IMG/VR virus record: IMGVR_UViG_3300010885_076238 | Span: 140,312 to 204,311 of that record | DNA: 64,000 nt | Direction: 5' to 3' (one strand) | The notes under the pieces: model-generated | Database searches by the model: none | Told to the model about the DNA's origin: nothing | What the model saw: only the letters and a program-made list of their open reading frames with translations | Program-made: the position numbers and the translations under genes | Part shown: positions 6,190-26,314 of the stretch, piece after piece | Layout of the letters: every line of letters begins with the position of its first letter | Position numbering within the stretch: the stretch's first letter is position 1

Positions 6190-6625
6190 TAGTAGATAAA
6201 AAAGAACCAGAGCTAGATGCTAAGACGTTACGAGAATTAGACGAACAATATTCAAAAGAAAAATCAGATAGAAAGAATCTCCAAGAAACAATAAATTTCA
6301 TGAAGTCTCTTCTAGATGACGATGACGAATGAATGCCTTGCACAAATTTTAATTACTAAAGTCCAACTTAAGAATAATTTTTAATTTACTTAATTTGGGC
6401 GTTAGTAATTAATAATTTATATGACGAATACCTGATGTTTATTAACTGATTTTTCTTTTCGAAAATAAGTCAAGTTTACGCAAACCTTTGTGGCATAAGG
6501 ACTTACGACAAAAAACTTTAACTTATTCATCCTAAGTCCTTATGTGACAGTAGTTTACGTCAAATCAAAGATTGCAAAAATAAAAATATATATTGATCGT
6601 TATCTGGGAACAAGGAGAAAATTTT

Positions 6626-7012
6626 ATGGGCTTGGACATGTACGCTTACGCTGTTGACCCCAAGGAATGTGAGAATTTTGATGAATTCTCGTGCAAATTC
6701 AAAGGCGAATACAAGCCAGATGAAATTTATTACTGGCGCAAACATCATGATTTGCATGGATGGATGGAAAATCTGTACCGTAGCAAGGGCGGTCTTGAGG
6801 AGTTCAACTGCCAGAAGGTGATGCTGACTGTGGATGATTTGAATGAGCTTGAGAAGGCACTTATCTCTAAAGGATTGCCTAGCACCACAGGATTTTTCTT
6901 CGGAAATAATCCTCCTGATGAAGAAACTTTGAACGAAGACCTTCTTTTTGTTGCTAAGGCCAGAAAAGTAATAGAAGAAGGAAATGTTGTATACTACGAC
7001 AGTTGGTGGTAA
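6626..7012 (+). CDS. Conserved phage hypothetical protein (MGLDMY...WRK...YDSWW type)
   Basis: AAGGAG RBS before ATG 6626; familiar phage motif pattern. Confidence 0.75.
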   Translation: MGLDMYAYAVDPKECENFDEFSCKFKGEYKPDEIYYWRKHHDLHGWMENLYRSKGGLEEFNCQKVMLTVDDLNELEKALISKGLPSTTGFFFGNNPPDEETLNEDLLFVAKARKVIEEGNVVYYDSWW

Positions 7013-7043
7013 AATAATAAAAAATAAGGAGCGTTATAAGATT

Positions 7044-7625
7044 ATGGACACTAAACTTTTTGATAGTCTGACCCGAGGTTGTTTTGAAGAACGATTTTTC
7101 GCCTATATGAAGGCTGTTGGTCTTGATCTAGTAACTGTCGCCTACAGTGGTGGTGGCGATAGTGGAGGAATGGACTATATGGAGTTCGATCCAGCCGTAA
7201 ACGACAAGATCAAGGACGGGATCAAGAATGATTTAGAAGAGCAACTTTGCAACCCAATTTATAGTAAGCATGGAGGCTTTGCCGATGGCGGCGGGTATCA
7301 TGTAAATGGTCAAGTGGTTTATGACGCTAATACTCAAACTGTCAACATTAGCGGAACAGACCATATAACCACCTACACTTATGAAGAAGGGCTAGAAGAC
7401 GAAGAGGCGGATGAAGAGACCAGACAAGAAGACTGGGAAGAGTGCGTTTATAGTAGGAGCGCAAAGCATCCCAAAAGTAAGGAATCCGACTACCTGTTTG
7501 CCTATCTATACGCCAGAGATTTTCTTGATAAGAAGTTGCCGGAAGACCTTCATAATAAAATGATGACCGAAGCGTCCATCAACGAAGATGAACACGCTAT
7601 AAAATATATGATAGAAATAAAATGA
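7044..7625 (+). CDS. DUF6878-like protein
   Basis: YSGGGDSG motif. Confidence 0.55.
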   Translation: MDTKLFDSLTRGCFEERFFAYMKAVGLDLVTVAYSGGGDSGGMDYMEFDPAVNDKIKDGIKNDLEEQLCNPIYSKHGGFADGGGYHVNGQVVYDANTQTVNISGTDHITTYTYEEGLEDEEADEETRQEDWEECVYSRSAKHPKSKESDYLFAYLYARDFLDKKLPEDLHNKMMTEASINEDEHAIKYMIEIK

Positions 7626-7834
7626 TGCGATATAACATTGACACTACGAATGGCGACCTTGTTCAAATCGACCTTGCTGGTGATTCTTGGATTGCCTCTG
7701 ACGACACTTCAATCCTTGTCACTTTGATAAAGTTCAACACTGACCCTTCTCAAAGTCTTTCTCTTTCCGTTACTAAGAAGGACTTGGAAAAAATAGTTTC
7801 TAATTTAAATATCATCCTGCCTAATAATAATTAA
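7622..7834 (+). CDS. Hypothetical protein
   Basis: ATGA overlap with the upstream gene. Confidence 0.55.
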   Translation: MMRYNIDTTNGDLVQIDLAGDSWIASDDTSILVTLIKFNTDPSQSLSLSVTKKDLEKIVSNLNIILPNNN

Positions 7835-7853
7835 TCTAAAGAGTTATGTAAAT

Positions 7854-8084
7854 ATGAGATATCGAGATCAAATTAAAGAAGCCCGTAAGTGGTCGTATGT
7901 TGAAGCCGGATTCAGCGAGGAACTTCCTCCTGATGAGCGACAGGTCGCTCTTGAACGAGCGAATGCTTTGTACGAAGAAGCTGTCAAAGAGTTAGAAGAA
8001 CTTGAGGCAGAAGAAGACGAGAGCTATAGTAAGTACGAACGCAAGTATATCAAGACTAAGAAACGTTGGGATAATGCAGCATGA
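7854..8084 (+). CDS. Hypothetical charged protein
   Basis: ORF ending in -NAA. Confidence 0.6.
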   Translation: MRYRDQIKEARKWSYVEAGFSEELPPDERQVALERANALYEEAVKELEELEAEEDESYSKYERKYIKTKKRWDNAA

Positions 8085-8308
8085 TCTGCACAAATTCCAA
8101 GGAAACAAAATAAAATAAAAAATAATTTGTTTCCTCTACGGAATTAGGCTCCTATAATTAATATTTTATAGGGTCGAAACACCTGATGTTTATTTTTGGT
8201 GCAGCACTTTCTACTACTTATAGAGAGGCGGTCAAAAATAATTTTCCTCTTCGACCGTTATGCAGTATGGCAGCGATTGAGACTGCCAAGCTCAACTGGG
8301 AACATGAA

Positions 8309-8551
8309 ATGTATCTGGTTCTGATGATTAGCAACAACCGCGTCACCTACGCAAAGGCGTTTGACCAGTGGGATTCGGCTGTGCTGTGTGCTGACAACGT
8401 GGTTATGGATATTGCCGGGGTTTCAAACGATATGCTCGATTGGGAGAACGGCGATTACCGCACGGTCTACGAGCATACAAACGGCACTACAGTGACGATT
8501 GAGACGCTGGACGGGCCGGGAGCTAAGAGTTCGGAAATTCTTGGTTCGTAA
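8309..8551 (+). CDS. Hypothetical cassette protein
   Basis: Start re-assigned downstream of promoter and leader hairpin. Confidence 0.6.
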   Translation: MYLVLMISNNRVTYAKAFDQWDSAVLCADNVVMDIAGVSNDMLDWENGDYRTVYEHTNGTTVTIETLDGPGAKSSEILGS

Positions 8552-8626
8552 GAAATAATTTTCGATCTAGTTCGTTATCCCAATGTGGCAGCGATTGAGA
8601 CTGCCGCAGCAACCGGAGCAAAAAAG

Positions 8627-8872
8627 ATGAAGAAAAATGTTTGGTTGAGTTCTGACCCCGCAAACACCGAGGGCGGAGACATGGGCTTCTGGTGGAATCG
8701 TGGTTGCAACAGCATTGCCGCTGTCTCTGTTGATGAAACCGGGCTGCGTTTCGATGGCAGCGACTTCACGGTCGTCATCGACAACCCAGGCCAGACCAAC
8801 GAGAGCGTGAAAGTGCTGGTCAACGACGTGGTCGTCTTCGGTTCTGTCAAGACCAAGGCCAAGGCGAGTTGA
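8627..8872 (+). CDS. Hypothetical cassette protein
   Basis: GGAG RBS after the leader hairpin. Confidence 0.6.
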   Translation: MKKNVWLSSDPANTEGGDMGFWWNRGCNSIAAVSVDETGLRFDGSDFTVVIDNPGQTNESVKVLVNDVVVFGSVKTKAKAS

Positions 8873-8878
8873 GTCCTA

Positions 8879-8910
8879 CCCTCCCCTGCCCATCAAGGGC
8901 AGGGGAGGGA
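8879..8910 (+). terminator. GC-rich hairpin between cassettes (no U-tract)
   Basis: ccctcccctgccc-atcaa-gggcaggggaggg. Confidence 0.55.
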
Positions 8911-8959
8911 GCTAGAAAATAATTTTCAATCCAGTTCGTTATACAAGTAGGAGAAAAAA

Positions 8960-9322
8960 ATGAGAATTACTGCTAAAGAAGCTGCTGATCGTTTGCGTGT
9001 GAGTTATGTAGTTGCTGCGGGCATCATGGCCCACCTAGAAGAGACAGGCGCAGCGAAGGTTGTGGAAAAGAAGTTCCATGCCAGCGGGAAGGGAAAGCCG
9101 ACTCGCGTGTATGAAGTTGAACAGCATACTGTGCTGAACTTCGGAGACGTTGCTGCTGCTGCCGCCGCACCCGTAGTCGAGCCAGTTGTAGTCGAGCCAG
9201 TTGTGTTCACGACTCCGGTTGTCGAGGCTCCGGCTGTTGTCGAGGTTGTCGAGGAGAAGATCGAAACGCTCGACCATGTAGCGGCTGCGTTGGCTCGACT
9301 CAAGGCCGACAACGCCGCGTGA
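8960..9322 (+). CDS. Small winged-HTH-like protein, paralog 2
   Basis: TAKEAADRLRVSY...GKGKPTRVYEV with a low-complexity V/E/P linker. Confidence 0.75.
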   Translation: MRITAKEAADRLRVSYVVAAGIMAHLEETGAAKVVEKKFHASGKGKPTRVYEVEQHTVLNFGDVAAAAAAPVVEPVVVEPVVFTTPVVEAPAVVEVVEEKIETLDHVAAALARLKADNAA

Positions 9323-9363
9323 AATAAAAATTGATTTATTTCGTTATCTGATTAGGAGAAACA

Positions 9364-9750
9364 ATGACCACTACAAATCGTTCCCCCTACACTGCCGCTG
9401 TACTTGAAGCCGACAGTCACACCACCCTAATGGGATGGGTTCGTGACAATCACGAAATCCCCGGCGATTTTCTGCTCAAGGGACACCATTGCACTGCCGA
9501 CACTAAGCCCGCCGCAAAAAGCTTGGCAGGCCATATGGTCGGCCAGCGTGTCGAACTGCGTGTTGTTCGATTCGGTCGGCTTGAAGGAATTATGGCAGTA
9601 GAAGTAGAAACTGTGATGCCATCGAAGAATACTCGAAAGCACGTTACGATTTGCCATGCACCCGATGTCAAGCCCATGATGTCAAACAGCATAGTCGAAT
9701 GGGTTGATGTGCAGCCGTTCATCCTGTACGGGGTAGTGCAGGAGGTGTAA
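9364..9750 (+). CDS. Hypothetical protein (possible 2H/PNK-associated-like fold)
   Basis: HHCT and HVT motifs; RBS AGGAG. Confidence 0.55.
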   Translation: MTTTNRSPYTAAVLEADSHTTLMGWVRDNHEIPGDFLLKGHHCTADTKPAAKSLAGHMVGQRVELRVVRFGRLEGIMAVEVETVMPSKNTRKHVTICHAPDVKPMMSNSIVEWVDVQPFILYGVVQEV

Positions 9751-10014: not shown

Positions 10015-10025
10015 GTAAACACCTA

Positions 10026-11927: not shown

Positions 11928-12158
11928 ATGGAACATTTAGGACATCAAAAATGGTGGTGCGACGTTTGCGACTCCAGGCAAGTGGATAGCAAAGATTCCA
12001 CAACTGGTTCGTACTATCAAGTAGCTGGCATGGAACATCCAGCCAGATCAAAAGAAGAAAAATGGACATCCATTATTTTCGCTGTCTGCTGCGAGTGTGA
12101 ACCAATCAAGGCTTTGCACAAAATCAAAGTCGAAAACCAAGTCGTTCGTAAAAATTAG
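11928..12158 (+). CDS. Small Zn-finger-like protein
   Basis: CxxC...CCEC. Confidence 0.55.
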   Translation: MEHLGHQKWWCDVCDSRQVDSKDSTTGSYYQVAGMEHPARSKEEKWTSIIFAVCCECEPIKALHKIKVENQVVRKN

Positions 12159-12284
12159 CTAATATACAAAATATTAATTAGCCAATAATTATTATTTTCA
12201 ACACCTGATGTTTATATGGAAACTAGACGGGGGCAATAAAATAATTTTCATTTCAAATCGTTATGTTCTTAGGAGGACAATGAA

Positions 12285-13341: not shown

Positions 13342-13522
13342 TACGCGCCCATAGGAATCCATCCCCCTCTGCTTCTCAATCGCGGAGGGGGGTGGATAAA
13401 CCTAAATTTGTGCTACTATAATAATACAACAATCGGCCGTCCGGCCGTGCCGCCACAAGCGCCACGGGTTGATTCCCCACGGGAGCCAGCCATCAAAGAC
13501 CGGCCCGCCGATTATTGCACAA

Positions 13523-13606
13523 GCCGAAGTGGCGGAATTGGCAGACGCGCCAGACTCAAAATCTGGTGTCCAAAAAGACGTGTGGGTTCAATTCCCACCT
13601 TCGGCA
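13523..13606 (+). tRNA. tRNA-Leu(CAA)
   Basis: GCCGAAG/CTTCGGC acceptor, CCAGA-CTCAAAA-TCTGG, long variable arm. Confidence 0.95.
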
Positions 13607-13691
13607 GTAACACCTACCGTTTATTATTAATTAATAATAAACCTATAAAATAATTAGTTCGCTCAATCGTTATTTGGTATGGAGGAAGGAT

Positions 13692-14878: not shown

Positions 14879-15139
14879 ATGTATTCTGAAAAACATTGCA
14901 TCATTACAATAAATGGCGACGAGTGTACCGTAGAGGGAAAATGCCTACTGACCGATAAACGTCAATTTGTAAAAGTAGCAAAGGAAGATTATGAAAAATG
15001 GGTCAGGGGAGAAGGAGCTATAAAAACTCTTATGCCCTATCTAACCGAAAGCGAAATGAACTTTCTTGAACACGGCGTTACAGATGAAGGTTGGGGAAAA
15101 GTAGTAAGTCCAAAAATTTCAATCCCAAAAGCAGAGTAG
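14879..15139 (+). CDS. Hypothetical protein
   Basis: PYLT..E..FL..G.T..GW pattern. Confidence 0.6.
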   Translation: MYSEKHCIITINGDECTVEGKCLLTDKRQFVKVAKEDYEKWVRGEGAIKTLMPYLTESEMNFLEHGVTDEGWGKVVSPKISIPKAE

Positions 15140-15328
15140 CCCGCACAAATTTAGACGGCAATATCTTATAAATATTCTGCCTCGCATTCGTTACGACTAA
15201 AAACATATAAAATAATAATTGTCATAAAAATAAAAATCACCTGATGTTTATATGGTCAGCAGAAGGATAAAAATAATTTTCGATCCAGTGCGTTATGGAA
15301 ATATAAGTTCCACAACCGGAGAAAAGGT

Positions 15329-15574
15329 ATGACAAAGAGAGAGCAGCAGACGGTAAAAAGGATGCTGGAAACGGGCCGCGTGATTGATTTCCGTGACGAA
15401 CGCCGACCGGGGGAAGTCGCGGAGGATGGCAACGGCTTGTGGGCATACCTCAAACCTGGCCTGAGATGCAGTCTGTCCGACACCCACATTTGCCACGAAT
15501 ATACGGTGGCTGACCTAGCTCGTGCCGTCAAGTGGGCTGAACCGTGCAATTGCAACGAGTGCAATATAAAATAA
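15329..15574 (+). CDS. Hypothetical Cys-containing protein
   Basis: Promoter + RBS. Confidence 0.6.
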   Translation: MTKREQQTVKRMLETGRVIDFRDERRPGEVAEDGNGLWAYLKPGLRCSLSDTHICHEYTVADLARAVKWAEPCNCNECNIK

Positions 15575-15612
15575 TTTTCGATCCAGTGCGTTATCCCAGC
15601 AGAGGAGACAAT

Positions 15613-15768
15613 TATGCCAAACTGGTTTGAAGATCCCGCCGTTTTGGATAAGTGGACGATCATTGAAGTTCAGTTGGATGAAGCCGACTGTCAAGAATAC
15701 AACGAGTACCTTGACTGGCTTGAGGCAACAACCGGCGAACAAGAGATGCCAGAAGATTTTTCTTACTA
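15613..15768 (+). CDS. Small acidic protein (51 aa)
   Basis: Promoter + GAGGAG RBS, MPNWFEDP... Confidence 0.6.
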
Positions 15769-15819
15769 GTAAAAAATAATTTTCGATCCATTTCGTTATA
15801 GAAAACAGGAGAAAAAATA

Positions 15820-16140
15820 ATGATTACTGCAAAAAATGCGTTAGAAGCACTTTGTCGTGATGGACTCGCTACAAGTTGGACGAGGAAAACTGAGGGTAGC
15901 GGAAGGCTTCGCTACACAGATTACACTGTGAAAAGCGATGCCTTTTCCCTCTCAAACGAAACCTATGGACAAAGAAGTTTTTTATACTTTCGATGCAAAA
16001 GCCCAGAACTTACTTATCAAATAATCAAAGTTCTTCGTGAAAATGGAGGCAACCCAGGAACTAGTTGGAATGGTGGGCCTGAACAGGGACACATCGAAAT
16101 GCAAGTCAGTAGGTTCAAAGGTTGGCATTGGTGGGAGTAA
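15820..16140 (+). CDS. Hypothetical protein
   Basis: Promoter + AGGAG. Confidence 0.65.
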   Translation: MITAKNALEALCRDGLATSWTRKTEGSGRLRYTDYTVKSDAFSLSNETYGQRSFLYFRCKSPELTYQIIKVLRENGGNPGTSWNGGPEQGHIEMQVSRFKGWHWWE

Positions 16141-16405
16141 GAAGCACAAAAATAAAAATAAAGTCTAGCCCAACCTGCCCAATACATATTCATACAGAAT
16201 GGCAGGTTGGGCTTAGGTGCTTAAACACCTAGTGTTTATTATAAGAATAAATAAAAAATTGGGGTTGGGCGCATTTCTATCGCTCTTATCGCTGTGACAA
16301 TTTGATAACGATTCTTTTCAAAAATAATTTTCCCAAAAATTATTTTCCCTTTCGACCGTTGTGCAGTATGGCCGCGATTGAGACGGCCAAGCCAAATCGG
16401 GAAAC

Positions 16406-16987
16406 ATGAAAATGGATACGATGACTTCGGATCAGTTGGTTGACCGTCTGCTTGATCTGCGTGGTGCGAAGTGCGGCTTTCGCATGGTCGCTGAAACCCC
16501 GACCCGTCTGAATAAGACGATTCGTGATGCGGCGGGCAATCGCGTTCCGAACCCCGCCTACGGCACTACAAAGTTGTCGGAAGTGGAAGTGACGCTGAAC
16601 CCGATCCATCAGAACAACGTAAACGCTCAGAAAAAGCGTGAGGGACACGATCCCGATTACGTTGCTGGGCCTTGCCAGTGGGGCAAGCGTCTGTTTCGGG
16701 AGGATGGTACGGTCGTGCCGATTCGGATTCACGACGGCAAGCCGCATAGCATGGTCGTGAAGTTTGAGAGAACGATCCAACGCGAGTTCCTCCGCGACGG
16801 CAAGCCGGTTGATGCGGCATCGGCCGCAGAGATTGCAAAGCAGTTGGCAGAGAAGAATGAAAAGGCCAACGACGCTGCGGAAGAAAAGCAGGGCGTGGAA
16901 AAGCCGGTGATCCACTTGACCTACAGTTTCGAGAACATTCGTCAAGTCACGCTCGACGGCGTGGTTTACGAAATCACTAAGGGTTGA
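16406..16987 (+). CDS. Hypothetical cassette protein
   Basis: Promoter, leader hairpin, high-GC codon usage, downstream hairpin at ~16996-17026. Confidence 0.7.
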   Translation: MKMDTMTSDQLVDRLLDLRGAKCGFRMVAETPTRLNKTIRDAAGNRVPNPAYGTTKLSEVEVTLNPIHQNNVNAQKKREGHDPDYVAGPCQWGKRLFREDGTVVPIRIHDGKPHSMVVKFERTIQREFLRDGKPVDAASAAEIAKQLAEKNEKANDAAEEKQGVEKPVIHLTYSFENIRQVTLDGVVYEITKG

Positions 16988-17101
16988 CCGATCCGGCCCC
17001 TCCCCCTACTGGGGGAGGGGTTAGGGGATAAAGAATAATTTCCGATCCGGTTCGTTATCTAGTATGGCCGCGATTGAGACGGCCAAAAAAGGAGAGCGAT
17101 C

Positions 17102-17338
17102 ATGACCTACCTTCACGACATTCACCCCGCCGCGACGATCATCGAAAGCCCGTTCACCGGCCACAACGGCAGCGGAGTCGATGGATACGGCGGGAAAATC
17201 AAAACCGGATTCAAGGTCAGAATCAACAATCGACTCCATAGGCTCTACTGTATGTGCTGGTCGAACTCTGGCACACTTTGGGTCAACGTGGGCGGGAAGC
17301 AGATCATCGTTCACGAGCATCGGCATCCAAGGGAATAA
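17102..17338 (+). CDS. Conserved phage hypothetical protein (GYGGKI.T...RLY..CWSNSGT)
   Basis: Promoter, leader hairpin, AGGAG. Confidence 0.7.
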   Translation: MTYLHDIHPAATIIESPFTGHNGSGVDGYGGKIKTGFKVRINNRLHRLYCMCWSNSGTLWVNVGGKQIIVHEHRHPRE

Positions 17339-17545
17339 AATCCCATTCATCAAACACCTGATGTTTATATAGCGGCGGACGAGCCGCGCCGAGCCTGGGC
17401 TGGGCGCATTTCTATCGCTCTTGTCCCTCTGACATTTTGATAACGAATTAGATGGAAAAAAATTTTGGCCAAAATTATTTTGGCTTTCGACCGTTATGCA
17501 GTATGGCCGCGATTGAGACGGCCAGCCTTAGTGGGAGATTGAATC

Positions 17546-18487
17546 ATGGCTCATAAAGTCGAAAACATGTTCTACGTTGGCGAGACGCCTTGGCATGGTC
17601 TGGGCGTTGCTTTGGAAGAGGCTCCGATCATTTCCGACGCCATTACGGCGGCGGGTCTGGATTGGACTGTCGGACTCCGCGACCTTTTCACGGCAGACGG
17701 CGTAAAGGTGCCGAATCGTGCGACGGTTCGCGAGACGGACGGAAGTGTGCTGGGCGTTGTCGGCCCGCGTTACACTCCGCTCCAAAATGCGGCGGCTCTC
17801 GACTGGTTTCAGCCGTTCATCGACAGCGGAGAGGCTTCGCTTCACACTGCCGGTAGCCTTGACGAGGGTCGCAAGGTCTGGGTGCTTGCCCAGTTGAACC
17901 GCGACCCCAGTGTGATCGTTCCGGGCGACGACGTTCGCAAGTTCATTCTCTTGTCGAATTCGCACGACGGCACGACGGCGGTTCGTCCGGGTTTCACGCC
18001 GATTCGCGTTGTCTGTGCGAATACGCTCGCGGCGGCTCATTGCTCGACCGCCAGCAAGTTGATTCGCGTTCGTCACACTCGCAAGATTGCGACGAATTTG
18101 GAAAAGGTTCGCGAGTTGATGAACGCCGCGAACGCGGAATTCGAGGCGACTGCCGACCAGTATCGGCATCTTGCCAGCAAGGCGTTCAACCAGACCGACG
18201 TTCGCAAGTACGTCAAGGTGCTGCTCGACGTTGAGACGGTTTCGGATGCCGACCTGCCCACTCGCACCAAGAATACCATCGAGGAAATTCTTGGACTGAT
18301 CGAGGGGCCGAAGCAATCGATGCCGGGCGTTCAAGGCACTTGGTGGGCCGCGTACAACGGGTTCAACGAATACTTGAACTACAATCGCGGTCGCACGACC
18401 GACAACCGTATGAACAGCCTATGGTTCGGCATGGGTGCGACCGACAACCGCAAGGCTCTCGACCTTGCCCTTAGCTTGTCGGCCTAG
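17546..18487 (+). CDS. DUF932 (LGT_TIGR03299)-family protein
   Basis: PWHGLG, Y.PLQN, NSHDG, TPIRVVCANTL, GTWWAAYN motifs. Confidence 0.9.
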   Translation: MAHKVENMFYVGETPWHGLGVALEEAPIISDAITAAGLDWTVGLRDLFTADGVKVPNRATVRETDGSVLGVVGPRYTPLQNAAALDWFQPFIDSGEASLHTAGSLDEGRKVWVLAQLNRDPSVIVPGDDVRKFILLSNSHDGTTAVRPGFTPIRVVCANTLAAAHCSTASKLIRVRHTRKIATNLEKVRELMNAANAEFEATADQYRHLASKAFNQTDVRKYVKVLLDVETVSDADLPTRTKNTIEEILGLIEGPKQSMPGVQGTWWAAYNGFNEYLNYNRGRTTDNRMNSLWFGMGATDNRKALDLALSLSA

Positions 18488-18607
18488 TGCGAACGATGCC
18501 CCCTACCCGAAAGGGTAGGGGGGATTCATCGTAAAATTATTTTCGGTTTGATTCGTTATCTAGTATGGCCGCGATTGAGACGGCCAAGCCAATCGGGAGA
18601 CCTAATC

Positions 18608-18796
18608 ATGATCATCGCCGCCATCCTCGCCGCCGCGTACGTCGCTTTCGGCATCGCCGGGACATCGTACGTCAACCGTTGGATTCGCAACGCTGACGAC
18701 GGGGATGCAGGCTGCGGCCTGTCGAGCCTGCACATTCTCAACCCCATCATGGTGGTGGTTGGAGCGAGAATGATGCTCGACAAGCTGTCCTCCTAG
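18608..18796 (+). CDS. Small membrane protein, copy 1
   Basis: Hydrophobic N-terminus; paralog of 25015. Confidence 0.7.
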   Translation: MIIAAILAAAYVAFGIAGTSYVNRWIRNADDGDAGCGLSSLHILNPIMVVVGARMMLDKLSS

Positions 18797-18926
18797 CGGG
18801 GGGCAGCCGCCCAACTCAACACCTAATGTTTATTGGCAAAGGTGAGCAATAAAAAATAAATTCCCAGCTAATTCGTTATCTAGTATGGCCGCGACAGTGA
18901 CGGCCAAGCCAATCTAGGAAATAACG

Positions 18927-19268
18927 ATGGCTCGCAAGCGTAGGTCAGACCGTAATCACGCGGTCTATCAGATTGTTTGCAAACCAACTGGAGAGCGTTA
19001 CATCGGACTGACGGTAGTGCGTGGAAGAGCCGTTCAGAAGAGCGTGAAGATTCGTTGGGACGGCCATGTTCATCACGCCGTAGTAGAGAGAGACAACCCG
19101 CTTCAACGTAGAATTCGTGAGTTTGGCCCCGAAGCATTTTCTCACGAACTGCTTCAAGTTGTGAGAGGCAAGCAGCCCGCTCATGACATTGAAAGGGGCT
19201 TGATCGTCAATATGAAGCCCGAACTGAATGTGGAGTGTACCGGCAAGAAACAAGCAAATCGTTCCTAA
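18927..19268 (+). CDS. GIY-YIG nuclease-like protein
   Basis: VYQI...YIGLT...RW..H...E...PELN. Confidence 0.75.
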   Translation: MARKRRSDRNHAVYQIVCKPTGERYIGLTVVRGRAVQKSVKIRWDGHVHHAVVERDNPLQRRIREFGPEAFSHELLQVVRGKQPAHDIERGLIVNMKPELNVECTGKKQANRS

Positions 19269-19324
19269 TTTTTTCGACTCTCATTCGTTATACAAATGTA
19301 GCCACCACCCCAAGCAGGAAAAAA

Positions 19325-19528
19325 ATGACTATCACAGAAGTCATCACGCCCGGCCCAGGCGGATTCAAATTTCTCAACATGACGAACGAGAAGTTCGACT
19401 CGTTCACCGCAGACGAAATCATTGCCGCTGCGGAAGCGGCCGGTCTGTGGACATACTACGAACTGGACGACGACGGGAAGCTGACCGGCTTGGCGATCAC
19501 CACGAAAGAAAGAGAGCCAAACGGATAG
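19325..19528 (+). CDS. Small hypothetical protein
   Basis: Promoter + AGGA. Confidence 0.6.
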   Translation: MTITEVITPGPGGFKFLNMTNEKFDSFTADEIIAAAEAAGLWTYYELDDDGKLTGLAITTKEREPNG

Positions 19529-19763
19529 CGGGCTTTGGCCCAATGCTCTAACACCTAATGTTTATAATCAACAGTGAGTTGCTTGCCAAAACCAAAGGAG
19601 CCGGACATGGAAACTTTTGAGCAGTGGTGCAAGAGGATGCAAGAAGAACACGATCAATGGATTTCAAGTCCCGAAGGACAAATCTGGATCAAGGGCTAAA
19701 AATTATTTTCGGTTTGATTCGTTATCAAGTATGGCCGATCATTCAACACCTAAGGAACAAGTC

Positions 19764-20078
19764 ATGAAAGCCAAAGAAGTGCAGATTGGACAGGAGTTCT
19801 ACACCAACTACGCGAGCATGGAACACTGCAAGCCGCTGTCTAACGTTCATCGTTGGAAAATGATCGCTCCAGAGCATCGGTTGGCGCAGCTTGTGCTTGT
19901 CACCGGGGACGTTTGCGATCACACTCGCATCATCGATGAAAAGGAAGAAGTGTTCGCCACAGCCGGTGAAGCTTGGCAAGATTGTGCGACTCAACTCAAC
20001 GCGATCATCGAAAAGATTCGTGAAGCCGTCAAGGATTGCGAGTCCAAAGTTCCCCGCCAGTGCAAGGAATCCGCGTGA
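19764..20078 (+). CDS. Hypothetical protein
   Basis: Promoter + AAGGA; start re-assigned. Confidence 0.6.
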   Translation: MKAKEVQIGQEFYTNYASMEHCKPLSNVHRWKMIAPEHRLAQLVLVTGDVCDHTRIIDEKEEVFATAGEAWQDCATQLNAIIEKIREAVKDCESKVPRQCKESA

Positions 20079-20137
20079 AAAAGGGGGCTTGGGAAACCAA
20101 GTCCCCAATAATTAACACCAAATGTCTATTATAGAGT

Positions 20138-20422
20138 ATGAGACTATTTATTGATGACATCAGAACTCCATCCGAAGACTACATCGTTCTCCGGTCTTCT
20201 GAGGATGCCATTCAATTCATAAAGCAAAATGGCTGGCCTGAGTTCATCAGTTTTGACCACGATCTTGGCGGCGACGATACCACTATGGTCTTTCTCAAAA
20301 GGCTTGTAAACGAAGTATGGGACGGCAAAACCATGCCGCCAGACTATATCGTTCATAGTGCCAACCCAATTGGATCGAAGAACATCGTGAGTTTCATGGA
20401 AAGCTGGAAGAAGTCAATCTAA
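20138..20422 (+). CDS. Cyclic-phosphate-processing receiver-like domain protein
   Basis: LFIDDIR...ISFDHDLG...VHSANPIG signature. Confidence 0.8.
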   Translation: MRLFIDDIRTPSEDYIVLRSSEDAIQFIKQNGWPEFISFDHDLGGDDTTMVFLKRLVNEVWDGKTMPPDYIVHSANPIGSKNIVSFMESWKKSI

Positions 20423-20496
20423 AAAATTTTTTTTACTTTCATTCGTTATACCAATATGGCAGCAATTGAGACTGCCGGATTACTAGGATTGCTCTA

Positions 20497-20574
20497 ATGT
20501 TTGGACTCGTTTCTATGATTTTGTTTAGCGTCGGAACTATTGGATTTTTCTACGTCACTAAGGAGGGCAACTAA
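20497..20574 (+). CDS. Putative 25-aa membrane peptide
   Basis: After leader hairpin + AGGA; MFGLVSMILFSVGTIGFFYVTKEGN. Confidence 0.45.
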   Translation: MFGLVSMILFSVGTIGFFYVTKEGN

Positions 20575-20726
20575 TGTTTATCGTAATTGAGCAGAAGGAA
20601 GACGGCACGACTCAGATTCTTTCGCCCGTAATCAACGACCAGAAAGAAGCAGAAGTAGAGGCTGCTTGGATTTCCCACCTGAACGGTTGGAGTTGCACAG
20701 TAAAGCAAGTGGATCAAGCCGCTTGA
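20574..20726 (+). CDS. Small hypothetical protein (50 aa)
   Basis: AAGGAGG RBS; TAATG coupling; ends in -QAA. Confidence 0.55.
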   Translation: MFIVIEQKEDGTTQILSPVINDQKEAEVEAAWISHLNGWSCTVKQVDQAA

Positions 20727-20858
20727 AACAATCGGCAGTAAACCTGCCACCCAACCCAAAAGGTTGGGCCATTAGCAAATACCTAATGTTTATTGTTGAA
20801 TCGAACCTGATAAAAATAATTTTCGATCTAGTTCGTTATAGATTTAGGAGGACGTTTT

Positions 20859-21071
20859 ATGACTAAGCCCGTTGAAATCTCAACCAAGGAAATGTGGGAA
20901 CTCTCAGCAGTGGGAGCCTGCATTCTTCTAGCTGTTCAAGAGATGGAAGAAGATGCTGTCGGCAGGCAAAAGGTGATCGAAGCGGGAAACCGTTTGTTCG
21001 ATCTCATGGGCAAAATTGGAGAACGAGATGATTGGTCATCCAGAAGCCCAAAAGGAGAGGAAAAAGTATGA
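20859..21071 (+). CDS. Hypothetical protein
   Basis: Promoter + AGGAGG. Confidence 0.6.
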   Translation: MTKPVEISTKEMWELSAVGACILLAVQEMEEDAVGRQKVIEAGNRLFDLMGKIGERDDWSSRSPKGEEKV

Positions 21072-21825: not shown

Positions 21826-22011
21826 TCGTCAACACCTAATGTTTATTTCCCGAACGGGACAATTCAGACAAAAATCAGGCAATTTATAATAATTATTCCC
21901 GCTCGGGAAAGTTAGGTAATCTGTGCAAGCCCATAAAAGAAAATAAAAAATCCAAGGCCCGATTGACGATAGATAAGGTACGGGACAGAAAACCATTCAA
22001 AGGAGTGAATC

Positions 22012-22278: not shown

Positions 22279-22902
22279 ATAAAATAAGGAAAGGAATCCA
22301 AAATGAAAAAAATCAACTGGAACCAAATCGTCAACGCTCTTATTCTTGTCAAAATAGGACAAGACTTAGGAACCAACTCGCAACTTACCCAATCCATCCA
22401 TCATATCATCGACGTTATTGCTACGTTCGCTAATGCCTTTGTAAGAATATAAAATAATTTCTCGATCAGTTCGTTATACAATAGTGGCCGTCCCATTCTC
22501 AGGAGAGCAAACATGAACACTGACACCAACTGGACTTACGAGCGCGAGGGAGCCAAAGAGATGATCGCAAGGCTCGAAGAAGAAATTCAGAATTCGACCT
22601 CCAAGCAGGATCGAATCAACAAACAGGAAGAAATACAAAGACTCCAATCGTAAAGAGTCAAAAAATAATTTTCAATCCCGTTCGTTATACAATAGTGGTC
22701 AACTAAAGGTGCTGACTGAAAGTGACACACGGCGGACAAGGTGGCCGACCGCAGGATCAGCACCACTCTAAAGGATCAAAAATGTATCTGACTCTCAATG
22801 ATTGGATGATGCTCGTTGGACTGATTTCTTTCGCAGGATTCTGTTCCTACACTGCCCACGAAATTCAAGGTGCAATCCACAACTACTTACATGGAGAATA
22901 TA

Positions 22903-23247
22903 ATGATTTTTGAAGTTGAAATGCTCGCGTTCGGAAAACCAGGAGAAGTTCGCAAGGTCAATGTTCCCGATGAGGCTCTAACTCGCGCAAAAGAAGATAC
23001 AGACAATATTCTTGAAGCCGCGTTTTATTACGGCCAAAACGATTTCCAGCCGCAAAACCACCCGTCAGTAAGTGCTGGCGATGTGATCCGCTGGAAAGAA
23101 GAAAACTATCTGGTTGCTGGTATGGGTTTCAAAAAGCTGACCGATGAACAACTAAATGATTATCGATCTCTCGACCAAAACGATAAGTTCATCGGAAGAT
23201 GCCAAATTGAAATAGGCGAACCAGTAGTAGGACGCAGAAACAAGTAA
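22903..23247 (+). CDS. YodL-like protein
   Basis: PSVSAGDVI...YLVAGMGFKKL resembles the YodL signature. Confidence 0.6.
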   Translation: MIFEVEMLAFGKPGEVRKVNVPDEALTRAKEDTDNILEAAFYYGQNDFQPQNHPSVSAGDVIRWKEENYLVAGMGFKKLTDEQLNDYRSLDQNDKFIGRCQIEIGEPVVGRRNK

Positions 23248-23442
23248 CCTGCACAATTCCATCAAACCATCAAAGCCCTAATAAATAATAAATATCGCTT
23301 ACGAAAGTGATATTTATAGGGCTTTATCTAACACCTAATGTTTATAAAACATCGCTAGTCGAAAAAAATAATTTTCGATCCAGTGCGTTATGCCAATGTG
23401 GGCAGCAATTGAGACTGCCCCCGTTTTCAGGAGGTTTGAATC

Positions 23443-23652
23443 ATGGGTGACGAAGATTCCTTTCTCGATTCGCGTTGGGAAGAAATTTGCGAGTATGAAG
23501 ACTCGTACGAGCAAGAGGATTGCTTCGATGACTTCGACGATGAAGATGATGAATACGATTGCTTCAGCGAAGACGACAACGACGACTTTGAAGACGACTT
23601 CGCTGACGACAACTACGACGACTACGACGACTTCTACGAGGAAGCCGCGTGA
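23443..23652 (+). CDS. Extremely acidic small protein (DNA-mimic candidate)
   Basis: More than half D/E with spaced F/Y; promoter, leader hairpin, AGGAGG. Confidence 0.7.
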   Translation: MGDEDSFLDSRWEEICEYEDSYEQEDCFDDFDDEDDEYDCFSEDDNDDFEDDFADDNYDDYDDFYEEAA

Positions 23653-23797
23653 AAATAGGGGGCTTGGGAAACCAAGCTTCCCCCAACTATCAACACCTAA
23701 TGTTTATAATGCCAACCCGCCGGAAACTTCTCGAAGAAAAATAATTTTCCATTCAAATCGTTATAAATCATCGGCCCAAAACCCTGAGGATCAAATC

Positions 23798-24343
23798 ATG
23801 AGCTACGAAAACGCCCCCGCCACCATCATGCTCGCGACCCACTGCTGCTGCTGCGGTCGCCCACTGGTCGATGCTATCTCTGTTGAGATGGGTATCGGCC
23901 CCGATTGCCGTCAAGGTCGCACCGATGGCATTTCCAAAGAACAGCAAGAAATCTGCAACAAACTCACCCATGCCGCCGCTCTTGCCGCGCAGGAAGGTCA
24001 AGTCGAGAAGGTTCGCGCGATTGCCGCCGAAATTGCCGCTCTAGGTCTGACTGAATTGGCCGATAAGGTTCAGCACCGTTTCGTCAACGCTGAAAGATTG
24101 GCAAAGATCAATATCATTCAGACCGGCGACCGTCTGACCGTTACAACCCCGTGGAAACGTAGCAGCGACTTTGTTGCCGCATGGAGAACCATTCCCGGCA
24201 GACGATATGGCGGGGCCGGTAAGAACATCATCCCCCTTAGCAGCAAGGGTGAGTTGTGGAATCTGCTACAGAAGTTCTTCCCCGGCCAATTCGGCAAGGG
24301 GCCAAAGGGACTGTTCAGAGTCCCTAAGAACGAGGCGGCTTGA
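23798..24343 (+). CDS. DUF6011-like Zn-ribbon protein
   Basis: CCCCGRPLVD..S...GIGPDC; start re-assigned after the promoter at 23737. Confidence 0.75.
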   Translation: MSYENAPATIMLATHCCCCGRPLVDAISVEMGIGPDCRQGRTDGISKEQQEICNKLTHAAALAAQEGQVEKVRAIAAEIAALGLTELADKVQHRFVNAERLAKINIIQTGDRLTVTTPWKRSSDFVAAWRTIPGRRYGGAGKNIIPLSSKGELWNLLQKFFPGQFGKGPKGLFRVPKNEAA

Positions 24344-24567
24344 CTGCCTGCACAAATTATATGCCCCCGAAATCCAAATGGAGAGTAGGGGTCGCGTTAT
24401 ACAGAAAAAACTTTAGAAATAAATATTAATACCTAATGTTTATTTTTATTCGCGCCGGTAGCCGGTAGCCGGTCGAGTTCGCCGGTAGTAAAAAAATAAT
24501 TTCCGATCCGGTTCGTTATACCAATATGGCCGCGATTGAGACGGCCAGCCAATCGGGAGGATGGGAC

Positions 24568-24858
24568 ATGGCGACTTGGATCAACGGCGACCCGGTGAAT
24601 GTTGTTGCAGGCATGATCAGGAGCCGCTGGTTGCTTCTGCCCGCAACTTGGTTTGAATCAGGCATGGGCGTCAAAGTGGACGACGAACGCAAATTCGTCC
24701 ATGTGATCGACCGACGCGGAAAGCCCGTGGGCAATCCCATAAAGTTTTGGGATGATGCTCCGGCCGGTGGCGGATCAAAAGAAGATGCCATCAACGAGTG
24801 CAAAGCATTCGGAGAGACATACGCACAAATTTTCCGCCCCCGAAATCCACAAGGATAG
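24568..24858 (+). CDS. Hypothetical cassette protein
   Basis: Promoter, leader hairpin, GGAGG. Confidence 0.6.
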   Translation: MATWINGDPVNVVAGMIRSRWLLLPATWFESGMGVKVDDERKFVHVIDRRGKPVGNPIKFWDDAPAGGGSKEDAINECKAFGETYAQIFRPRNPQG

Positions 24859-25014
24859 TAGGGGTCGCGTTATACAGAAACGGCAGAAAATATTTGGCCT
24901 GCCACTTAACACCTAACGTTTATTTTTGATGGTGGGCAGCAAAAAATAATTTTCGGTTTGGTGCGTTATCTAGTATGGCCGCAATTGAGACGGCCAGCCA
25001 ATCGGGAGCTTGTC

Positions 25015-25209
25015 ATGATCGCCATCGTCATCGTCACCGCCGCGTACGTCGCTTTCGGCATCGCGGGGTACTCGTACGTCAACCGTTGGATTTGCCACGG
25101 CCTTGACGACGGCAATGAGTCTGGAACTGGCCTGTCGTGCTTGCACATTCTCAACCCCATCATGGTGGCGGTTGGAGCGAGAATAATGCTCGACAAGCTG
25201 TCCTCCTAG
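25015..25209 (+). CDS. Small membrane protein, copy 2
   Basis: Paralog of 18608 in a duplicated cassette. Confidence 0.7.
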   Translation: MIAIVIVTAAYVAFGIAGYSYVNRWICHGLDDGNESGTGLSCLHILNPIMVAVGARIMLDKLSS

Positions 25210-25343
25210 CGGAGGGCAGCCGCCCAACCAAACACCTAATGTTTATAAGTGAGCGAACGCGCGGCTCCCGAATAATTTTCAATTTCATTCGTTATCCAGT
25301 ATCGCCGCACTTGTGACGGCAGGCCGACCATAGGAACCAACCC

Positions 25344-25649
25344 ATGACCACCACTCGCGAAACGCTTCTGGCCGAGTTTGCCTCCGTCTACAGCCGCACA
25401 GGCTGGAGGGTCGCCGCTTCTCTCGACGGCATGACCGTGGATCAGTTGCAGACCACGCTCGACGGTCTGTACGAAGCCATCAGTGAGGAAAGGGAAAAGA
25501 TGGACGCTTGGTTCGCAAGACAGAACGAGGATGCTGAAATGTCTGCCCGTGAGTGGGAGCAGTTGCAGGCAAAAGCCGATGCTGAGGCTGCTGCCGAAGC
25601 TGAGTGGTCGAAGTGGCAACACCACTACGACAGGCTGGTAGGGGTGTGA
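25344..25649 (+). CDS. Hypothetical acidic helical protein
   Basis: Promoter, variant leader hairpin, AGGA. Confidence 0.65.
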   Translation: MTTTRETLLAEFASVYSRTGWRVAASLDGMTVDQLQTTLDGLYEAISEEREKMDAWFARQNEDAEMSAREWEQLQAKADAEAAAEAEWSKWQHHYDRLVGV

Positions 25650-25778
25650 CCCGCCTCATATCGAAACACCTAATGTTTATAATGGGCCTGAGTTAGCCGA
25701 AAATAATCCGCCCACCCAACCGTTATCAGTGTAGCGACCGCATATGTGACGGTCTCGCCTACCCTTGGAGTTCCTGCC

Positions 25779-26207
25779 ATGTACACCACTCCCTCCTTCG
25801 TGAAGAACGTTCTCCCCGCTGGCAAGATCCCCGGCATGGAAGCCCACTACAGCGATCTGTCCGACTTGAGCATCACCATCCCCTTCGCACTCATGGGATG
25901 GGACGATGGCCTCGACTGTGGCTACCAAGACTCCCCGCCCACTGATTACGTTGTAGGGGCTTTCGAGAATCGTGATGAGGCTGAGGATCAGCTTGCTTCC
26001 TGTGTGCAAAACAACCCAGCCGGTATCTATTGGATCGTGGAGAGCTATCAGGAGCCGCTGTACAGCTTCAATAGCGTCAGCTGGGACGGAATCAATAGGG
26101 ATGCCTATCTGTCCATGTCGCTCACCCGCGAGGATGTCATACGCCTTGAGAGCAGGCTGGTAAGGGAGAAGACCCAGAGCGACCATACAGTTGTGCGACT
26201 GGCCTAA
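25779..26207 (+). CDS. Hypothetical protein
   Basis: Promoter, variant leader hairpin, GGAG. Confidence 0.6.
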   Translation: MYTTPSFVKNVLPAGKIPGMEAHYSDLSDLSITIPFALMGWDDGLDCGYQDSPPTDYVVGAFENRDEAEDQLASCVQNNPAGIYWIVESYQEPLYSFNSVSWDGINRDAYLSMSLTREDVIRLESRLVREKTQSDHTVVRLA

Positions 26208-26314
26208 TGCACAGCACGACTGCACAGAACCAAGGCATCCTGCTGCCAGAACGGCAAGCAGGGCCGCAATCAAACACCTACGGTCTATTATATAATCGAA
26301 CACCCAATGTTTAT

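What the first reader, a model, noticed from the sequence alone, without database searches (positions are those of the whole stretch)
6340..26314. The box is half of a bipartite element: GCACA ~76-92 bp upstream, often bracketing an inverted repeat
Seen: GCACA(AAT) starts 76-92 bp before 14 of the 24 boxes: 6340, 8088, 12116, 13517, 15143, 16144, 17271, 18730, 20695, 23251, 24350, 24823, 25143, 26222. It is kept even inside coding sequence. The sequence between is unrelated from copy to copy but often palindromic (6350-6410, 16166-16213, 23272-23326, and a whole tRNA at 13523). At box 21830 the arrangement is mirrored (inverted repeat, then TGTGC at ~21922). Inference: a spacing-constrained two-site element (DNA looping or wrapping, or a 3' RNA module) that I do not recognise.
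Basis: partly seen in the sequence, partly recalled or inferred. Interest (0 to 1): 0.75.

Follow-up and report, generated by a model that had tools for sequence, protein, structure and literature searches.

The report
Phage gene-boundary cassette with fixed spacing
In the accessory-gene array of an uncultured 204-kb freshwater phage, a short word at the end of one gene (GCACAAA) lies about 100 bases before the box that opens the next gene group. The pair forms the two edges of a boundary cassette at which related strains swap genes, and why the spacing is fixed remains unknown.

Summary
In the phage genome, 18 of about 27 boxes (AACACCTRATGTTTATW) have a + strand GCACA 82-98 nt upstream, where about 0.25 is expected by chance. 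GCACA is the most enriched 5-mer at that offset and is absent from nearly all other upstream bins.

Three relatives keep GCACAAA unchanged and keep the same spacing (about 100 nt to the box's TAT), but each has its own box word.

GCACAAA sits at the stop codon of the preceding gene or at a tRNA 3' end. The spacer is AT-rich and often, but not always, palindromic. It has no canonical terminators, no strand bias in folding and no helical phasing.

The box is directional and specific to each lineage. It is often followed about 44 nt later by a second promoter-like motif (AAAATAATTTTC-N10-CGTTAT, 47 copies).

Contigs of related strains from other metagenomes show modules reshuffled, with breakpoints at the box, at the second motif, at a 5'UTR hairpin and once exactly at GCACA.

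Best reading: this is a composite gene-end/gene-start linker cassette of a hyperplastic array. It works like the PeSL promoter-terminator cassettes of T4-type phages but has different words and an extra gene-end word. DNA looping is not supported. A jointly read two-site signal is not excluded.

The parts
6340..6442 (+). GCACAAAT, long AT-rich hairpin, then box
   Evidence: spacer fold z -5.1. Orthologous cassette is present in 3 relatives.
8088..8193 (+). GCACAAAT 3 nt after a stop codon, two hairpins, then box
12116..12215 (+). GCACAAAA, weakly structured AT-rich spacer, then box. The upstream ORF runs 43 nt into the cassette.
13517..13625 (+). GCACA, 1 nt, tRNA-Leu (13523-13606), 2 nt, then variant box AACACCTACCGTTTATT
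15143..15251 (+). GCACAAAT 3 nt after a stop codon, spacer, then box. One strain variant replaces 15228-15567 and keeps a 97-nt spacing.
16144..16239 (+). GCACAAAA, GC-rich hairpin (16167-16213), then box CCTAGTGTTTAT. A strain deletion of 15768-16142 ends exactly at this GCACA.
17271..17368 (+). GCACA inside a GC-rich ORF, then box. In one strain the box's 5' edge (17351) is joined to the upstream context of box 1608.
18730..18833 (+). GCACA inside a GC-rich ORF, then box. Paralogue of 25143-25246. Strain breakpoints at 18816 and 18833.
20695..20793 (+). GCACA in an ORF, three small hairpins, then box
23251..23345 (+). GCACA 3 nt after a stop codon, 22-bp hairpin, then box
24350..24443 (+). 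GCACAAAT 6 nt after a stop codon, spacer, then box. Similarity to the 24823 copy starts exactly at GCACA.
   Evidence: (family D14)
24823..24923 (+). GCACAAAT, spacer, then box CCTAACGTTTAT. The ORF runs on into the cassette.
25143..25246 (+). GCACA in an ORF, then box. Paralogue of 18730.
   Evidence: family D11
26209..26314 (+). Two GCACA (26209, 26222), then the last box of the array (CCCAATGTTTAT)
1608..1619 (+). Box without GCACA. The upstream stop codon is about 20 nt away and is followed by a small hairpin. Other boxes of this short type: 3637, 9760, 10022, 19554, 20570, 21835, 23696, 25669.
15261..15296 (+). Example of the second motif P (AAAATAATTTTC-N10-CGTTAT). There are 47 + strand copies and 1 - strand copy in the genome, nearly all at genome 110-167 kb. 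tRNA-Ile (4003) starts 8 nt after one of them.
17032..17109 (+). Example of P followed by a conserved 5'UTR hairpin (GGCCGC gattgaga cGGCC), a ribosome-binding site and ATG. Seven copies. It is also a recombination junction.
   Evidence: (family D3)

Best explanation
GCACAAA and the box are the two edges of one composite gene-boundary cassette in a hyperplastic array of small accessory genes. The array lies at genome 122-167 kb and has GC 0.40-0.54, against 0.30-0.34 in the rest of the phage.

Shown:
- GCACAAA is a gene-end word on the coding strand. It sits within about 15 nt of the stop codon, overlaps it, or directly follows a tRNA 3' end.
- It is followed by an AT-rich trailer of about 90 nt that is often a palindrome and in one case is a tRNA.
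- Then comes a directional 16-17-nt box whose sequence is specific to each phage lineage.
- The box is usually followed about 44 nt later by a second promoter-like motif P, sometimes a 5'UTR hairpin, then the ribosome-binding site and ATG.
- Related strains differ by swaps, insertions and deletions of gene modules, and the breakpoints fall on these repeated words.

Inferred:
- The box is a phage-specific promoter, or the binding site of a co-evolving phage factor, that opens the next transcription unit.
- GCACAAA with its trailer closes the previous unit at the RNA level, by 3'-end formation, processing or insulation. It would be read by a factor that is the same in all four lineages, perhaps a host factor.
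- The repeated words double as short homologies for modular shuffling, as in PeSL cassettes.

On this reading the 100-nt spacing is the standard length of the trailer module rather than a distance measured by one protein. Whether descent or selection keeps it is not settled.
For: Pairing statistics are.

The architecture is conserved in relatives G001/L115, L185 and L188. GCACAAA is invariant, each relative has its own box word, and the spacing is about 100 nt. In the orthologous cassette before the 'MGLD' gene, GCACA to box is 100-107 nt in four phages, while box to ATG ranges from about 53 to about 390 nt.

Gene-end position: 7 of 65 GCACAAA lie within 12 nt after a stop codon, against 1.5% for permuted 7-mers. 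Three of these are outside the array. The stop codon is within -14 to +19 nt in most of the 35 pairs, and G001 ORFs often end in GCA CAA AAT TAA. The word follows tRNA 3' ends in both phages.

The box words drift with phylogeny and occur only in their own lineage. Boxes are all on one strand and occur only in the array. Some boxes are followed directly by a ribosome-binding site and ATG with no P.

P has 47 + strand copies and 1 - strand copy. A tRNA starts 8 nt after one of them in this phage, and the same arrangement appears in G001 by my reading of the sequence.

Strain recombinants have junctions at the box edge, after the box, at P, after CGTTAT, after the 5'UTR hairpin and at GCACA. The similarity between two cassette copies starts exactly at GCACA (family D14).

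PeSL literature: PMC2839356 and PMC4122927.
Against: No transcript data exist for this phage: no RNA run was listed. Promoter, terminator and processing roles are therefore all inferred.

The trailers are not canonical intrinsic terminators (22 terminator-like sites against 21.5 in shuffles). About half of the relatives' trailers have no significant fold. Fold energies show no strand bias (16 against 16).

P and the box are not sigma-70-like in this phage.

Three independent GC-rich coding stretches still carry GCACA at the right distance (about 0.1 expected). A pure 'trailer module' view does not explain this, and it hints at a real distance requirement.

The tight spacing, with an SD of 4.7 nt across unrelated spacers, is not accounted for mechanistically.
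Confidence: 0.5

Rival explanations
1. It is a true two-site signal read jointly during transcription. A factor binds GCACAAAU in the nascent RNA once the ribosome has left at the stop codon. It then acts on the polymerase when the polymerase reaches the box about 100 nt later, causing termination, pausing or hand-over to a new initiation. This would resemble range-limited RNA-tethered factors acting from nut-type sites.
For: The spacing is conserved in four lineages without helical phasing. The word is strand-specific and tied to the stop codon. Sense-strand GCACA is mildly depleted in array ORFs: 12 found against 17 +/- 4 expected, with 6 of the 12 being the box-paired ones. In G001 the figures are 9 against 15.2. 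There is no depletion outside the array. GCACA is kept at the right distance inside three GC-rich ORFs.
Against: No candidate factor was identified. Nine boxes work without the word. A tether model predicts a maximum distance, not a minimum. The depletion is weak (p 0.14 and 0.06). There are no RNA data.
Confidence: 0.17
2. It is a DNA-level two-site complex. One protein or protein pair binds GCACAAA and the box and loops or wraps the 90-bp AT-rich DNA between them, for example as an upstream activator of a box promoter.
For: The spacer is AT-rich and flexible. The palindromes are symmetric on both strands. The box has a preferred distance to P, with a mode of 43-47 nt and outliers near +/-10, +21 and +30 nt. 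This suggests the box acts as DNA.
Against: There is no helical phasing between GCACA and the box (R 0.10, p 0.8, n 18). Distances fill a 16-nt range evenly. The word's link to the stop codon has no role in this model. The box has no conserved dyad symmetry across lineages.
Confidence: 0.08
3. It is an integron-like recombination site. The stretch from GCACAAA to the box would act as an attC analogue: conserved ends, a variable palindromic interior, and a position at the 3' end of each cassette gene. It would be cut and joined by a dedicated recombinase.
For: The array consists of small, co-oriented genes of mixed GC content. ORFs end in or at the left word. Strain breakpoints fall at GCACA and at the box edge.
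Against: No tyrosine or serine recombinase was found in the record, and the search controls were valid. The two ends are not complementary to each other. Genes carry their own promoter-like motif. Breakpoints fall just as often at P and at the 5'UTR hairpin, which fits general recombination between short repeats.
Confidence: 0.05
4. It is a small antisense RNA gene. The reverse complement of the box (WATAAACA here, GATAAATA in L185) would act as a T4-late-type -10 promoter firing leftwards. It would make an RNA of about 95 nt that ends at AUUUGUGC after the hairpin, and the fixed spacing would be the RNA's length.
For: The reverse complement of the box resembles TATAAATA. In some cassettes the hairpin is directly followed, on the minus strand, by AAAAUUUGUGC.
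Against: The distance from hairpin to tail varies from 0 to 21 nt, and many trailers have no hairpin. The minus strand does not fold better. The reverse-complement box is not found before any minus-strand or structural gene. The tRNA-Leu in the slot is on the + strand.
Confidence: 0.05

Closest known systems
PeSL / PmSL cassettes (promoter-early stem-loop) of T4-type phage hyperplastic regions (Arbiol et al. 2010, PMC2839356; Comeau et al. 2014, PMC4122927)
   Same: Both are composite intergenic cassettes between small accessory ORFs, with an AT-rich stretch, a stem-loop, a promoter, a Shine-Dalgarno sequence and ATG. Both are repeated many times on one strand of a variable region. The motifs differ between phage lineages. 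Insertions, deletions and swaps between close relatives have their junctions in the cassettes.
   Different: This phage has no detectable T4 capsid or portal family. The promoter-like motifs are not sigma-70-like. The stem-loops lack U-tracts and are often absent. There is an extra invariant gene-end word (GCACAAA) at a conserved distance of about 100 nt from a lineage-specific box, and a second promoter-like motif follows. Neither the gene-end word nor the fixed spacing is described for PeSLs in the passages I read.
Integron gene-cassette arrays (attC sites)
   Same: Both are arrays of small co-oriented genes of mixed composition. Each gene is followed by an element with conserved ends, a variable and often palindromic interior, and a bounded length. 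Stop codons lie at or inside the element.
   Different: There is no integrase. The two ends are not complementary. The cassettes carry promoters. Junctions are not confined to one site.
Gene-end / gene-start punctuation in other viruses (mononegavirus GE/GS signals; the mimivirus 'hairpin rule' with its AAAATTGA promoter). Cited from my own knowledge.
   Same: A short conserved word or hairpin closes each gene, and a conserved word opens the next.
   Different: These are different polymerases and viruses, and there is no homology. Here the function is only inferred from sequence.
T7 early-region RNase III sites and the mitochondrial tRNA punctuation model. Cited from my own knowledge.
   Same: Long imperfect hairpins, or a tRNA, lie between genes in a position where they could be processed to separate mRNAs.
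   Different: Neither system has conserved flanking words or a fixed spacing. Processing has not been shown here.

Membership tests
PeSL cassette | Lies between small, variable ORFs of a hyperplastic region, in many copies on the coding strand | tested here: met
   26 boxes and 47 P motifs, all on the + strand, at genome 110-167 kb. Many ORFs there have no orthologue in the relative.
PeSL cassette | Contains a sigma-70-like early promoter (TTGACA-N17-TATAAT or a close variant) | tested here: not met
   P is AAAATAATTTTC-N10-CGTTAT and the box is AACACCTRATGTTTATW. Sigma-70-like sites number 37 against 26.8 +/- 5.3 in shuffles, and they do not sit in the cassettes. The relative G001 does have TAGAAT in its version of P.
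PeSL cassette | A stem-loop just upstream of the promoter that terminates transcription | tested here: inconclusive
   Most trailers in this phage fold well (z down to -9.6). However, they have no U-tracts (22 terminator-like sites against 21.5 expected), and about half of the relatives' trailers are unstructured. Termination activity cannot be tested here.
PeSL cassette | Recombination junctions between related phages fall in the cassettes | tested here: met
   Contigs from four other metagenome runs show junctions at the box, P, the 5'UTR hairpin and GCACA. The loose ends map to other cassettes of the window.
PeSL cassette | The host phage is a T4-type myovirus | tested here: inconclusive
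   The Gp23 and Portal_T4 families gave no hit, but those searches had no positive control. The nearest cultured phage for the SNF2 helicase is RM378, at 32% identity.
Integron attC | An adjacent tyrosine recombinase (IntI) | tested here: not met
   PF00589 and PF00239 are absent from the 204-kb record, which is 88% complete. Controls were positive in 14 and 12 genomes.
Integron attC | Inverse core and core sites that are complementary to each other (RYYYAAC / GTTRRRY) | tested here: not met
   Inspection of the two words in the sequences shows that GCACAAAT cannot pair with any register of the box.
Intrinsic (Rho-independent) terminator | A GC-rich hairpin followed directly by a U-tract on the transcribed strand | tested here: not met
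   One search shows no enrichment. No + strand hit coincides with the spacer hairpins; the only one inside a cassette (16213-16232) overlaps the box.
Phase-dependent two-site DNA complex (looping, or an activator at -60 to -100) | Spacings cluster at multiples of the helical repeat | tested here: not met
   The Rayleigh test gives R 0.09-0.12 and p about 0.8 for GCACA to box in this phage. In G001 p is 0.04-0.24.
tRNA-like punctuation element | The spacers are tRNAs or degenerate tRNA-like structures | tested here: not met
   An Rfam scan of positions 1-27000 at E <= 1 finds only the three true tRNAs. One slot does hold tRNA-Leu.

The most novel reading that the evidence does not exclude
GCACAAA and the lineage-specific box are read together as a distance-constrained gene-end/gene-start punctuation signal. 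A dedicated, still unidentified factor would be recruited at the stop-codon-linked word and would act about 100 nt further on at the box. This would be a kind of transcription-unit punctuation not described for phages. It would also create the standard-length linkers that let this phage clade swap accessory genes.
Probability: 0.2. Interest if true: 0.8.

Novelty: new variant of a known kind. Interest (0 to 1): 0.58.

Why it matters
Large phages keep fast-changing arrays of small accessory genes, and how those arrays are regulated and reshuffled is known only for T4-type PeSLs. This is an unrelated, uncultured freshwater clade with a richer boundary cassette. It has an invariant gene-end word, a trailer of standard length, a co-evolving start box and a second promoter-like motif. 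Natural strain variants are caught recombining at exactly these words.

If the fixed 100-nt spacing proves to be functional, it would point to a new way of coupling the end of one gene to the start of the next. Even if it does not, the words give a simple sequence signature for finding such arrays and their module boundaries in metagenomes.

Tried and rejected
- Exact box words were searched in IMG/VR. Only single, chance-level hits appeared outside each word's own lineage.
- Blastn and tblastn against GenBank phages found no close cultured relative.
- RNA sequencing runs: none was listed, so transcript ends could not be mapped.
- T7-type RNA polymerase, T4 Gp23 and T4 portal families gave no hit, but these searches had no positive control.
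- Integrase and resolvase are absent, with valid controls, so the integron reading was rejected.
- Base pairing between GCACAAAU and the box: none in any register.
- The sigma-54 promoter, DnaA box, IHF, Fis and MotA-box resemblances I recalled from memory are all partial or inconsistent across copies, so I dropped them.
- Degenerate-tRNA spacers were rejected.
- Strand asymmetry of spacer folds: none, so there is no evidence for an RNA structure selected on either strand.
- The box as a conserved palindromic operator: the dyad AAACA-N5-TGTTT in this phage has no homologous dyad in the relatives' boxes.
- A sigma-70 -10 element at a fixed distance after TGCACA is not consistent between copies.
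- Eighty loci carrying the 'MGLD' protein (50-60% identity) lack the GCACAAA-plus-trailer pattern, so the system is confined to four known lineages.
- L184 and L187 are identical to the window and uninformative.
- The 10-bp quantisation of the box-to-P distance is suggestive only. The Rayleigh p of 0.0007 is driven mainly by one mode.

Full report
**Context.** The window is the last 64 kb of a 204,311-bp IMG/VR virus record from freshwater metagenomes, with an estimated completeness of 88%. It is a large phage. It has tail-fibre and baseplate-like proteins, 12 tRNA genes and a tmRNA gene in the window, a CCA-adding or poly(A)-polymerase-type enzyme, an SNF2 helicase and one sigma-70 region-2 protein. 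No cultured phage is close. The best match for the SNF2 helicase is Rhodothermus phage RM378, at 32% identity.

The 'box' of the finding is (a)AACACCTRATGTTTATW. It has 26 clear copies, all on the + strand and all between genome positions 122.5 and 166.6 kb, which is window 1608-26314. That region has GC 0.40-0.54, against 0.30-0.34 elsewhere, and consists of small co-oriented ORFs.

**The observation.** All 14 listed GCACA sites exist on the + strand. Between window 6000 and 26500 there are only 16 + strand GCACA, and 14 of them lie 81-97 nt before the CCTRATG core of a box. GCACA is not over-represented in the window as a whole (62 against 77.7 expected).

Genome-wide, 18 of about 27 boxes have the word at 82-98 nt, and every other upstream bin is empty or holds a single copy. 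GCACA, TGCAC and CACAA are the three most enriched 5-mers at that offset. From the genome frequency of the word I expect about 0.25 such pairs by chance. Over 35 pairs from four phages the logo is tT-GCACAAA-tt, and nothing else is conserved from -30 to +60.

**Relatives.** The SNF2 protein retrieved one IMG/VR relative (L115 = G001, 69% identity) and three metagenome contigs (L185 and L186 at 78%, L188 at 68%). All show the same architecture with a different box word:
- G001: GGTTAGCATTTATCC, 22 copies on one strand;
- L188: GGTTTACCTATATCC;
- L185: CATCATSCTGRYATTTATCT.

The box drifts stepwise with relatedness. This phage and L185 share CCTGATRTTTAT, and G001 and L188 share GGTTWRC...TATCC. 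Each word is found in multiple copies only in its own lineage.

GCACAAA, by contrast, is invariant. The distance from its start to the TAT of the box is 98.2 +/- 4.7 nt in this phage (n = 18), 99.8 +/- 8.9 in G001 (n = 12), 100-101 in L188 (n = 3) and 100-102 in L185 (n = 2). In the orthologous cassette before the conserved 'MGLD' gene, this distance is 100-107 nt in all four phages. The spacer sequences cannot be aligned, and the adjacent box-to-ATG distance ranges from about 53 to about 390 nt. More distant phages that carry the MGLD protein (80 loci) lack the pattern.

**What the left word is.** GCACAAA is a gene-end word.
- Seven of 65 copies in the genome lie within 12 nt after the stop codon of an ORF of at least 50 aa, against 1.5% for permuted 7-mers. 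Three of the seven are outside the array, with no box nearby.
- In most of the 35 pairs the stop codon is within -14 to +19 nt of the word. It precedes the word by 1-7 nt, overlaps it (TA-G-CACA), or lies just inside the following A/T run. G001 ORFs often end GCA CAA AAT TAA.
- In both this phage and G001 the word also follows a tRNA 3' end directly.
- Sense-strand GCACA is mildly depleted in array ORFs: 12 against 17 +/- 4 after codon shuffling, and six of the 12 are the box-paired ones. G001 gives 9 against 15.2. ORFs outside the array are not depleted (43 against 31.6).

**What lies between.** In this phage most spacers fold significantly better than shuffles, with z down to -9.6. One slot is filled exactly by tRNA-Leu. 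In the relatives about half of the spacers, which have GC of only 9-25%, have no significant fold.

The hairpins lack U-tracts, and terminator-like sites are at the shuffle level (22 against 21.5). The + and - strands fold equally well (16 against 16). A permissive Rfam scan finds only the true tRNAs. The spacer is therefore AT-rich, often palindromic and of standard length. It is not a canonical terminator, not a known RNA and not a decayed tRNA.

**What the right word is.** The box is directional and array-specific, and its dyad symmetry is not conserved between lineages. It ends in a -10-like TTTAT or TATAT.

It is usually followed by a second, information-rich motif P (AAAATAATTTTC-N10-CGTTAT), which has 47 + strand copies and 1 - strand copy. 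The relative's version of P is AAAATAAAAT-N5-GTAGAATGTTAT. A tRNA gene starts 8 nt after GTTAT in both phages, so P behaves like a promoter.

The distance from the box TAT to GTTAT has a mode of 43-47 nt here, and modes of 34-35 and 44-46 nt in G001. This is a hint of 10-bp steps that I do not regard as established. Some boxes are followed directly by a ribosome-binding site and ATG with no P, in both phages and at orthologous genes. This fits a promoter better than an upstream activator site. All of this is inference, because no RNA run could be found.

**Recombination.** Logan contigs from four other metagenome runs that hold 28-56% of this region were laid on window 15001-21000, and their loose ends were mapped back to the window. 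The strains differ by module swaps whose junctions fall on the repeated words:
- At the 5' edge of a box: position 17351 is joined to the sequence that precedes box 1608, and 18816 to the sequence that precedes box 21835.
- Just after a box: 19568 is joined to the sequence after box 25669. Junctions also fall at 18833 and 16246.
- At P: 15568, 16334 and 18533.
- Right after CGTTAT: 20839.
- After the 5'UTR hairpin: 17085 and 20476.
- At GCACA: one deletion of P plus a 106-aa ORF (15768-16142) ends exactly at GCACA 16144, leaving the stop codon TAG overlapping the word.

Another strain replaces 15228-15567 and still has a box 97 nt after GCACA. Within the window, the similarity between two cassette copies begins exactly at GCACA (family D14). 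GCACAAA plus trailer therefore travels with the upstream gene, and the box and what follows travel with the downstream gene.

**Interpretation.** The best-supported reading is a composite gene-end/gene-start linker cassette of a hyperplastic array. Functionally it is analogous to the PeSL promoter-terminator cassettes that mediate modular shuffling in T4-type phages (PMC2839356, PMC4122927).

It is not a member of that family in the strict sense. The promoter-like motifs are not sigma-70-like, the stem-loops are not canonical terminators, and T4 hallmark families were not detected, although that last search had no positive control. It also has two features I did not find in the PeSL passages I read: an invariant gene-end word, and a conserved distance of about 100 nt to a lineage-specific box.

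The integron analogy fails on recombinase, on end complementarity and on promoters. DNA looping or wrapping fails on helical phasing. An antisense small-RNA reading has no support.

**What stays unexplained.** I cannot explain why the spacing is so tight across unrelated spacers, which include a tRNA and three independent GC-rich coding stretches that keep only the 5-mer (about 0.1 expected by chance). This leaves room, which I put at about 0.2, for a genuinely joint reading of the two words. One form would be an RNA-tethered factor loaded at the stop-codon-linked word and acting at the box.

**Verdict.** This is a new variant of a known kind, of moderate to high interest, chiefly because of the conserved spacing and the directly observed strain-level shuffling at the words.

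Noticed in passing
window 8235-8312, 16336-16413, 17032-17109, 17471-17548, 18533-18610, 24943-25020, 25269-25346: A conserved 5'UTR stem-loop (GGCCGC gattgaga cGGCC, with variants such as GGCAGC...CTGCC) lies between the P motif and the ribosome-binding site of at least seven genes. It could be a shared translational operator or a stabiliser. It is also a recombination junction in strain variants.
   Followed up: partly
window 26338-26380, 26441-26483, 26505-26547: Just after the last box there are three tandem copies of an AT-rich repeat (AAAAtATTTTACAAAAATTTTAATTAA). It looks like a sigma-70-type TTTACA / TATAT promoter and faces the low-GC genes that start at 26601. G001 has a similar stretch after its last box.
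   Followed up: no
window 4471-6332: The SNF2 helicase ORF is 572 aa here and 608-619 aa in the three relatives. About 140 nt of leftover sequence ending in a stop at 6332 precedes the GCACAAAT. This could be a frameshift, a truncation or an assembly error.
   Followed up: no
window 13393-13422: A good sigma-70-like promoter (TGGATA-N18-TATAAT) contains GCACAAAT in reverse orientation (13406-13413). It lies about 100 nt upstream of the GCACA that precedes tRNA-Leu.
   Followed up: no
window 43909-44044 (-): Rfam reports a 136-nt tRNA match here that ARAGORN does not call, next to tRNA-Ser 43817-43904. It may be a tRNA with an insertion or intron.
   Followed up: no
window 44551-44902 (-): The phage encodes a one-piece tmRNA (127 bits) with the unusual tag GTNSYAMAA. 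It sits beside two tRNA clusters and a CCA-adding or poly(A)-polymerase-family gene (51710-53035).
   Followed up: no
window 6490-6550; L185 about 4090-4160: Between box 6431 and its P motif lies an inserted hairpin of about 130 nt (AAGGACTTA...TAAGTCCTT). It is shared with relative L185 but absent from L115 and L188.
   Followed up: no
window 21835-21926; G001 59891-59930: There is a mirrored arrangement at box 21835, with an inverted repeat followed by TGTGC 86 nt downstream. In G001 an inverted pair of boxes sits at the end of the array. These are single cases and their meaning is unknown.
   Followed up: partly
window 56942-64000 (+): An open reading frame of more than 2,350 aa runs off the end of the record and has no significant Pfam match.
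   Followed up: partly
window 1-26300 against 26300-64000: GC content drops sharply at the end of the array, from 0.40-0.54 to 0.30-0.34. Array cargo includes MoxR-type AAA+ and VWA proteins (just upstream of the window, genome 126-139 kb), DUF932, DUF6915 and DUF6011, with individual ORFs up to 61% GC. This suggests genes acquired from higher-GC sources.
   Followed up: partly
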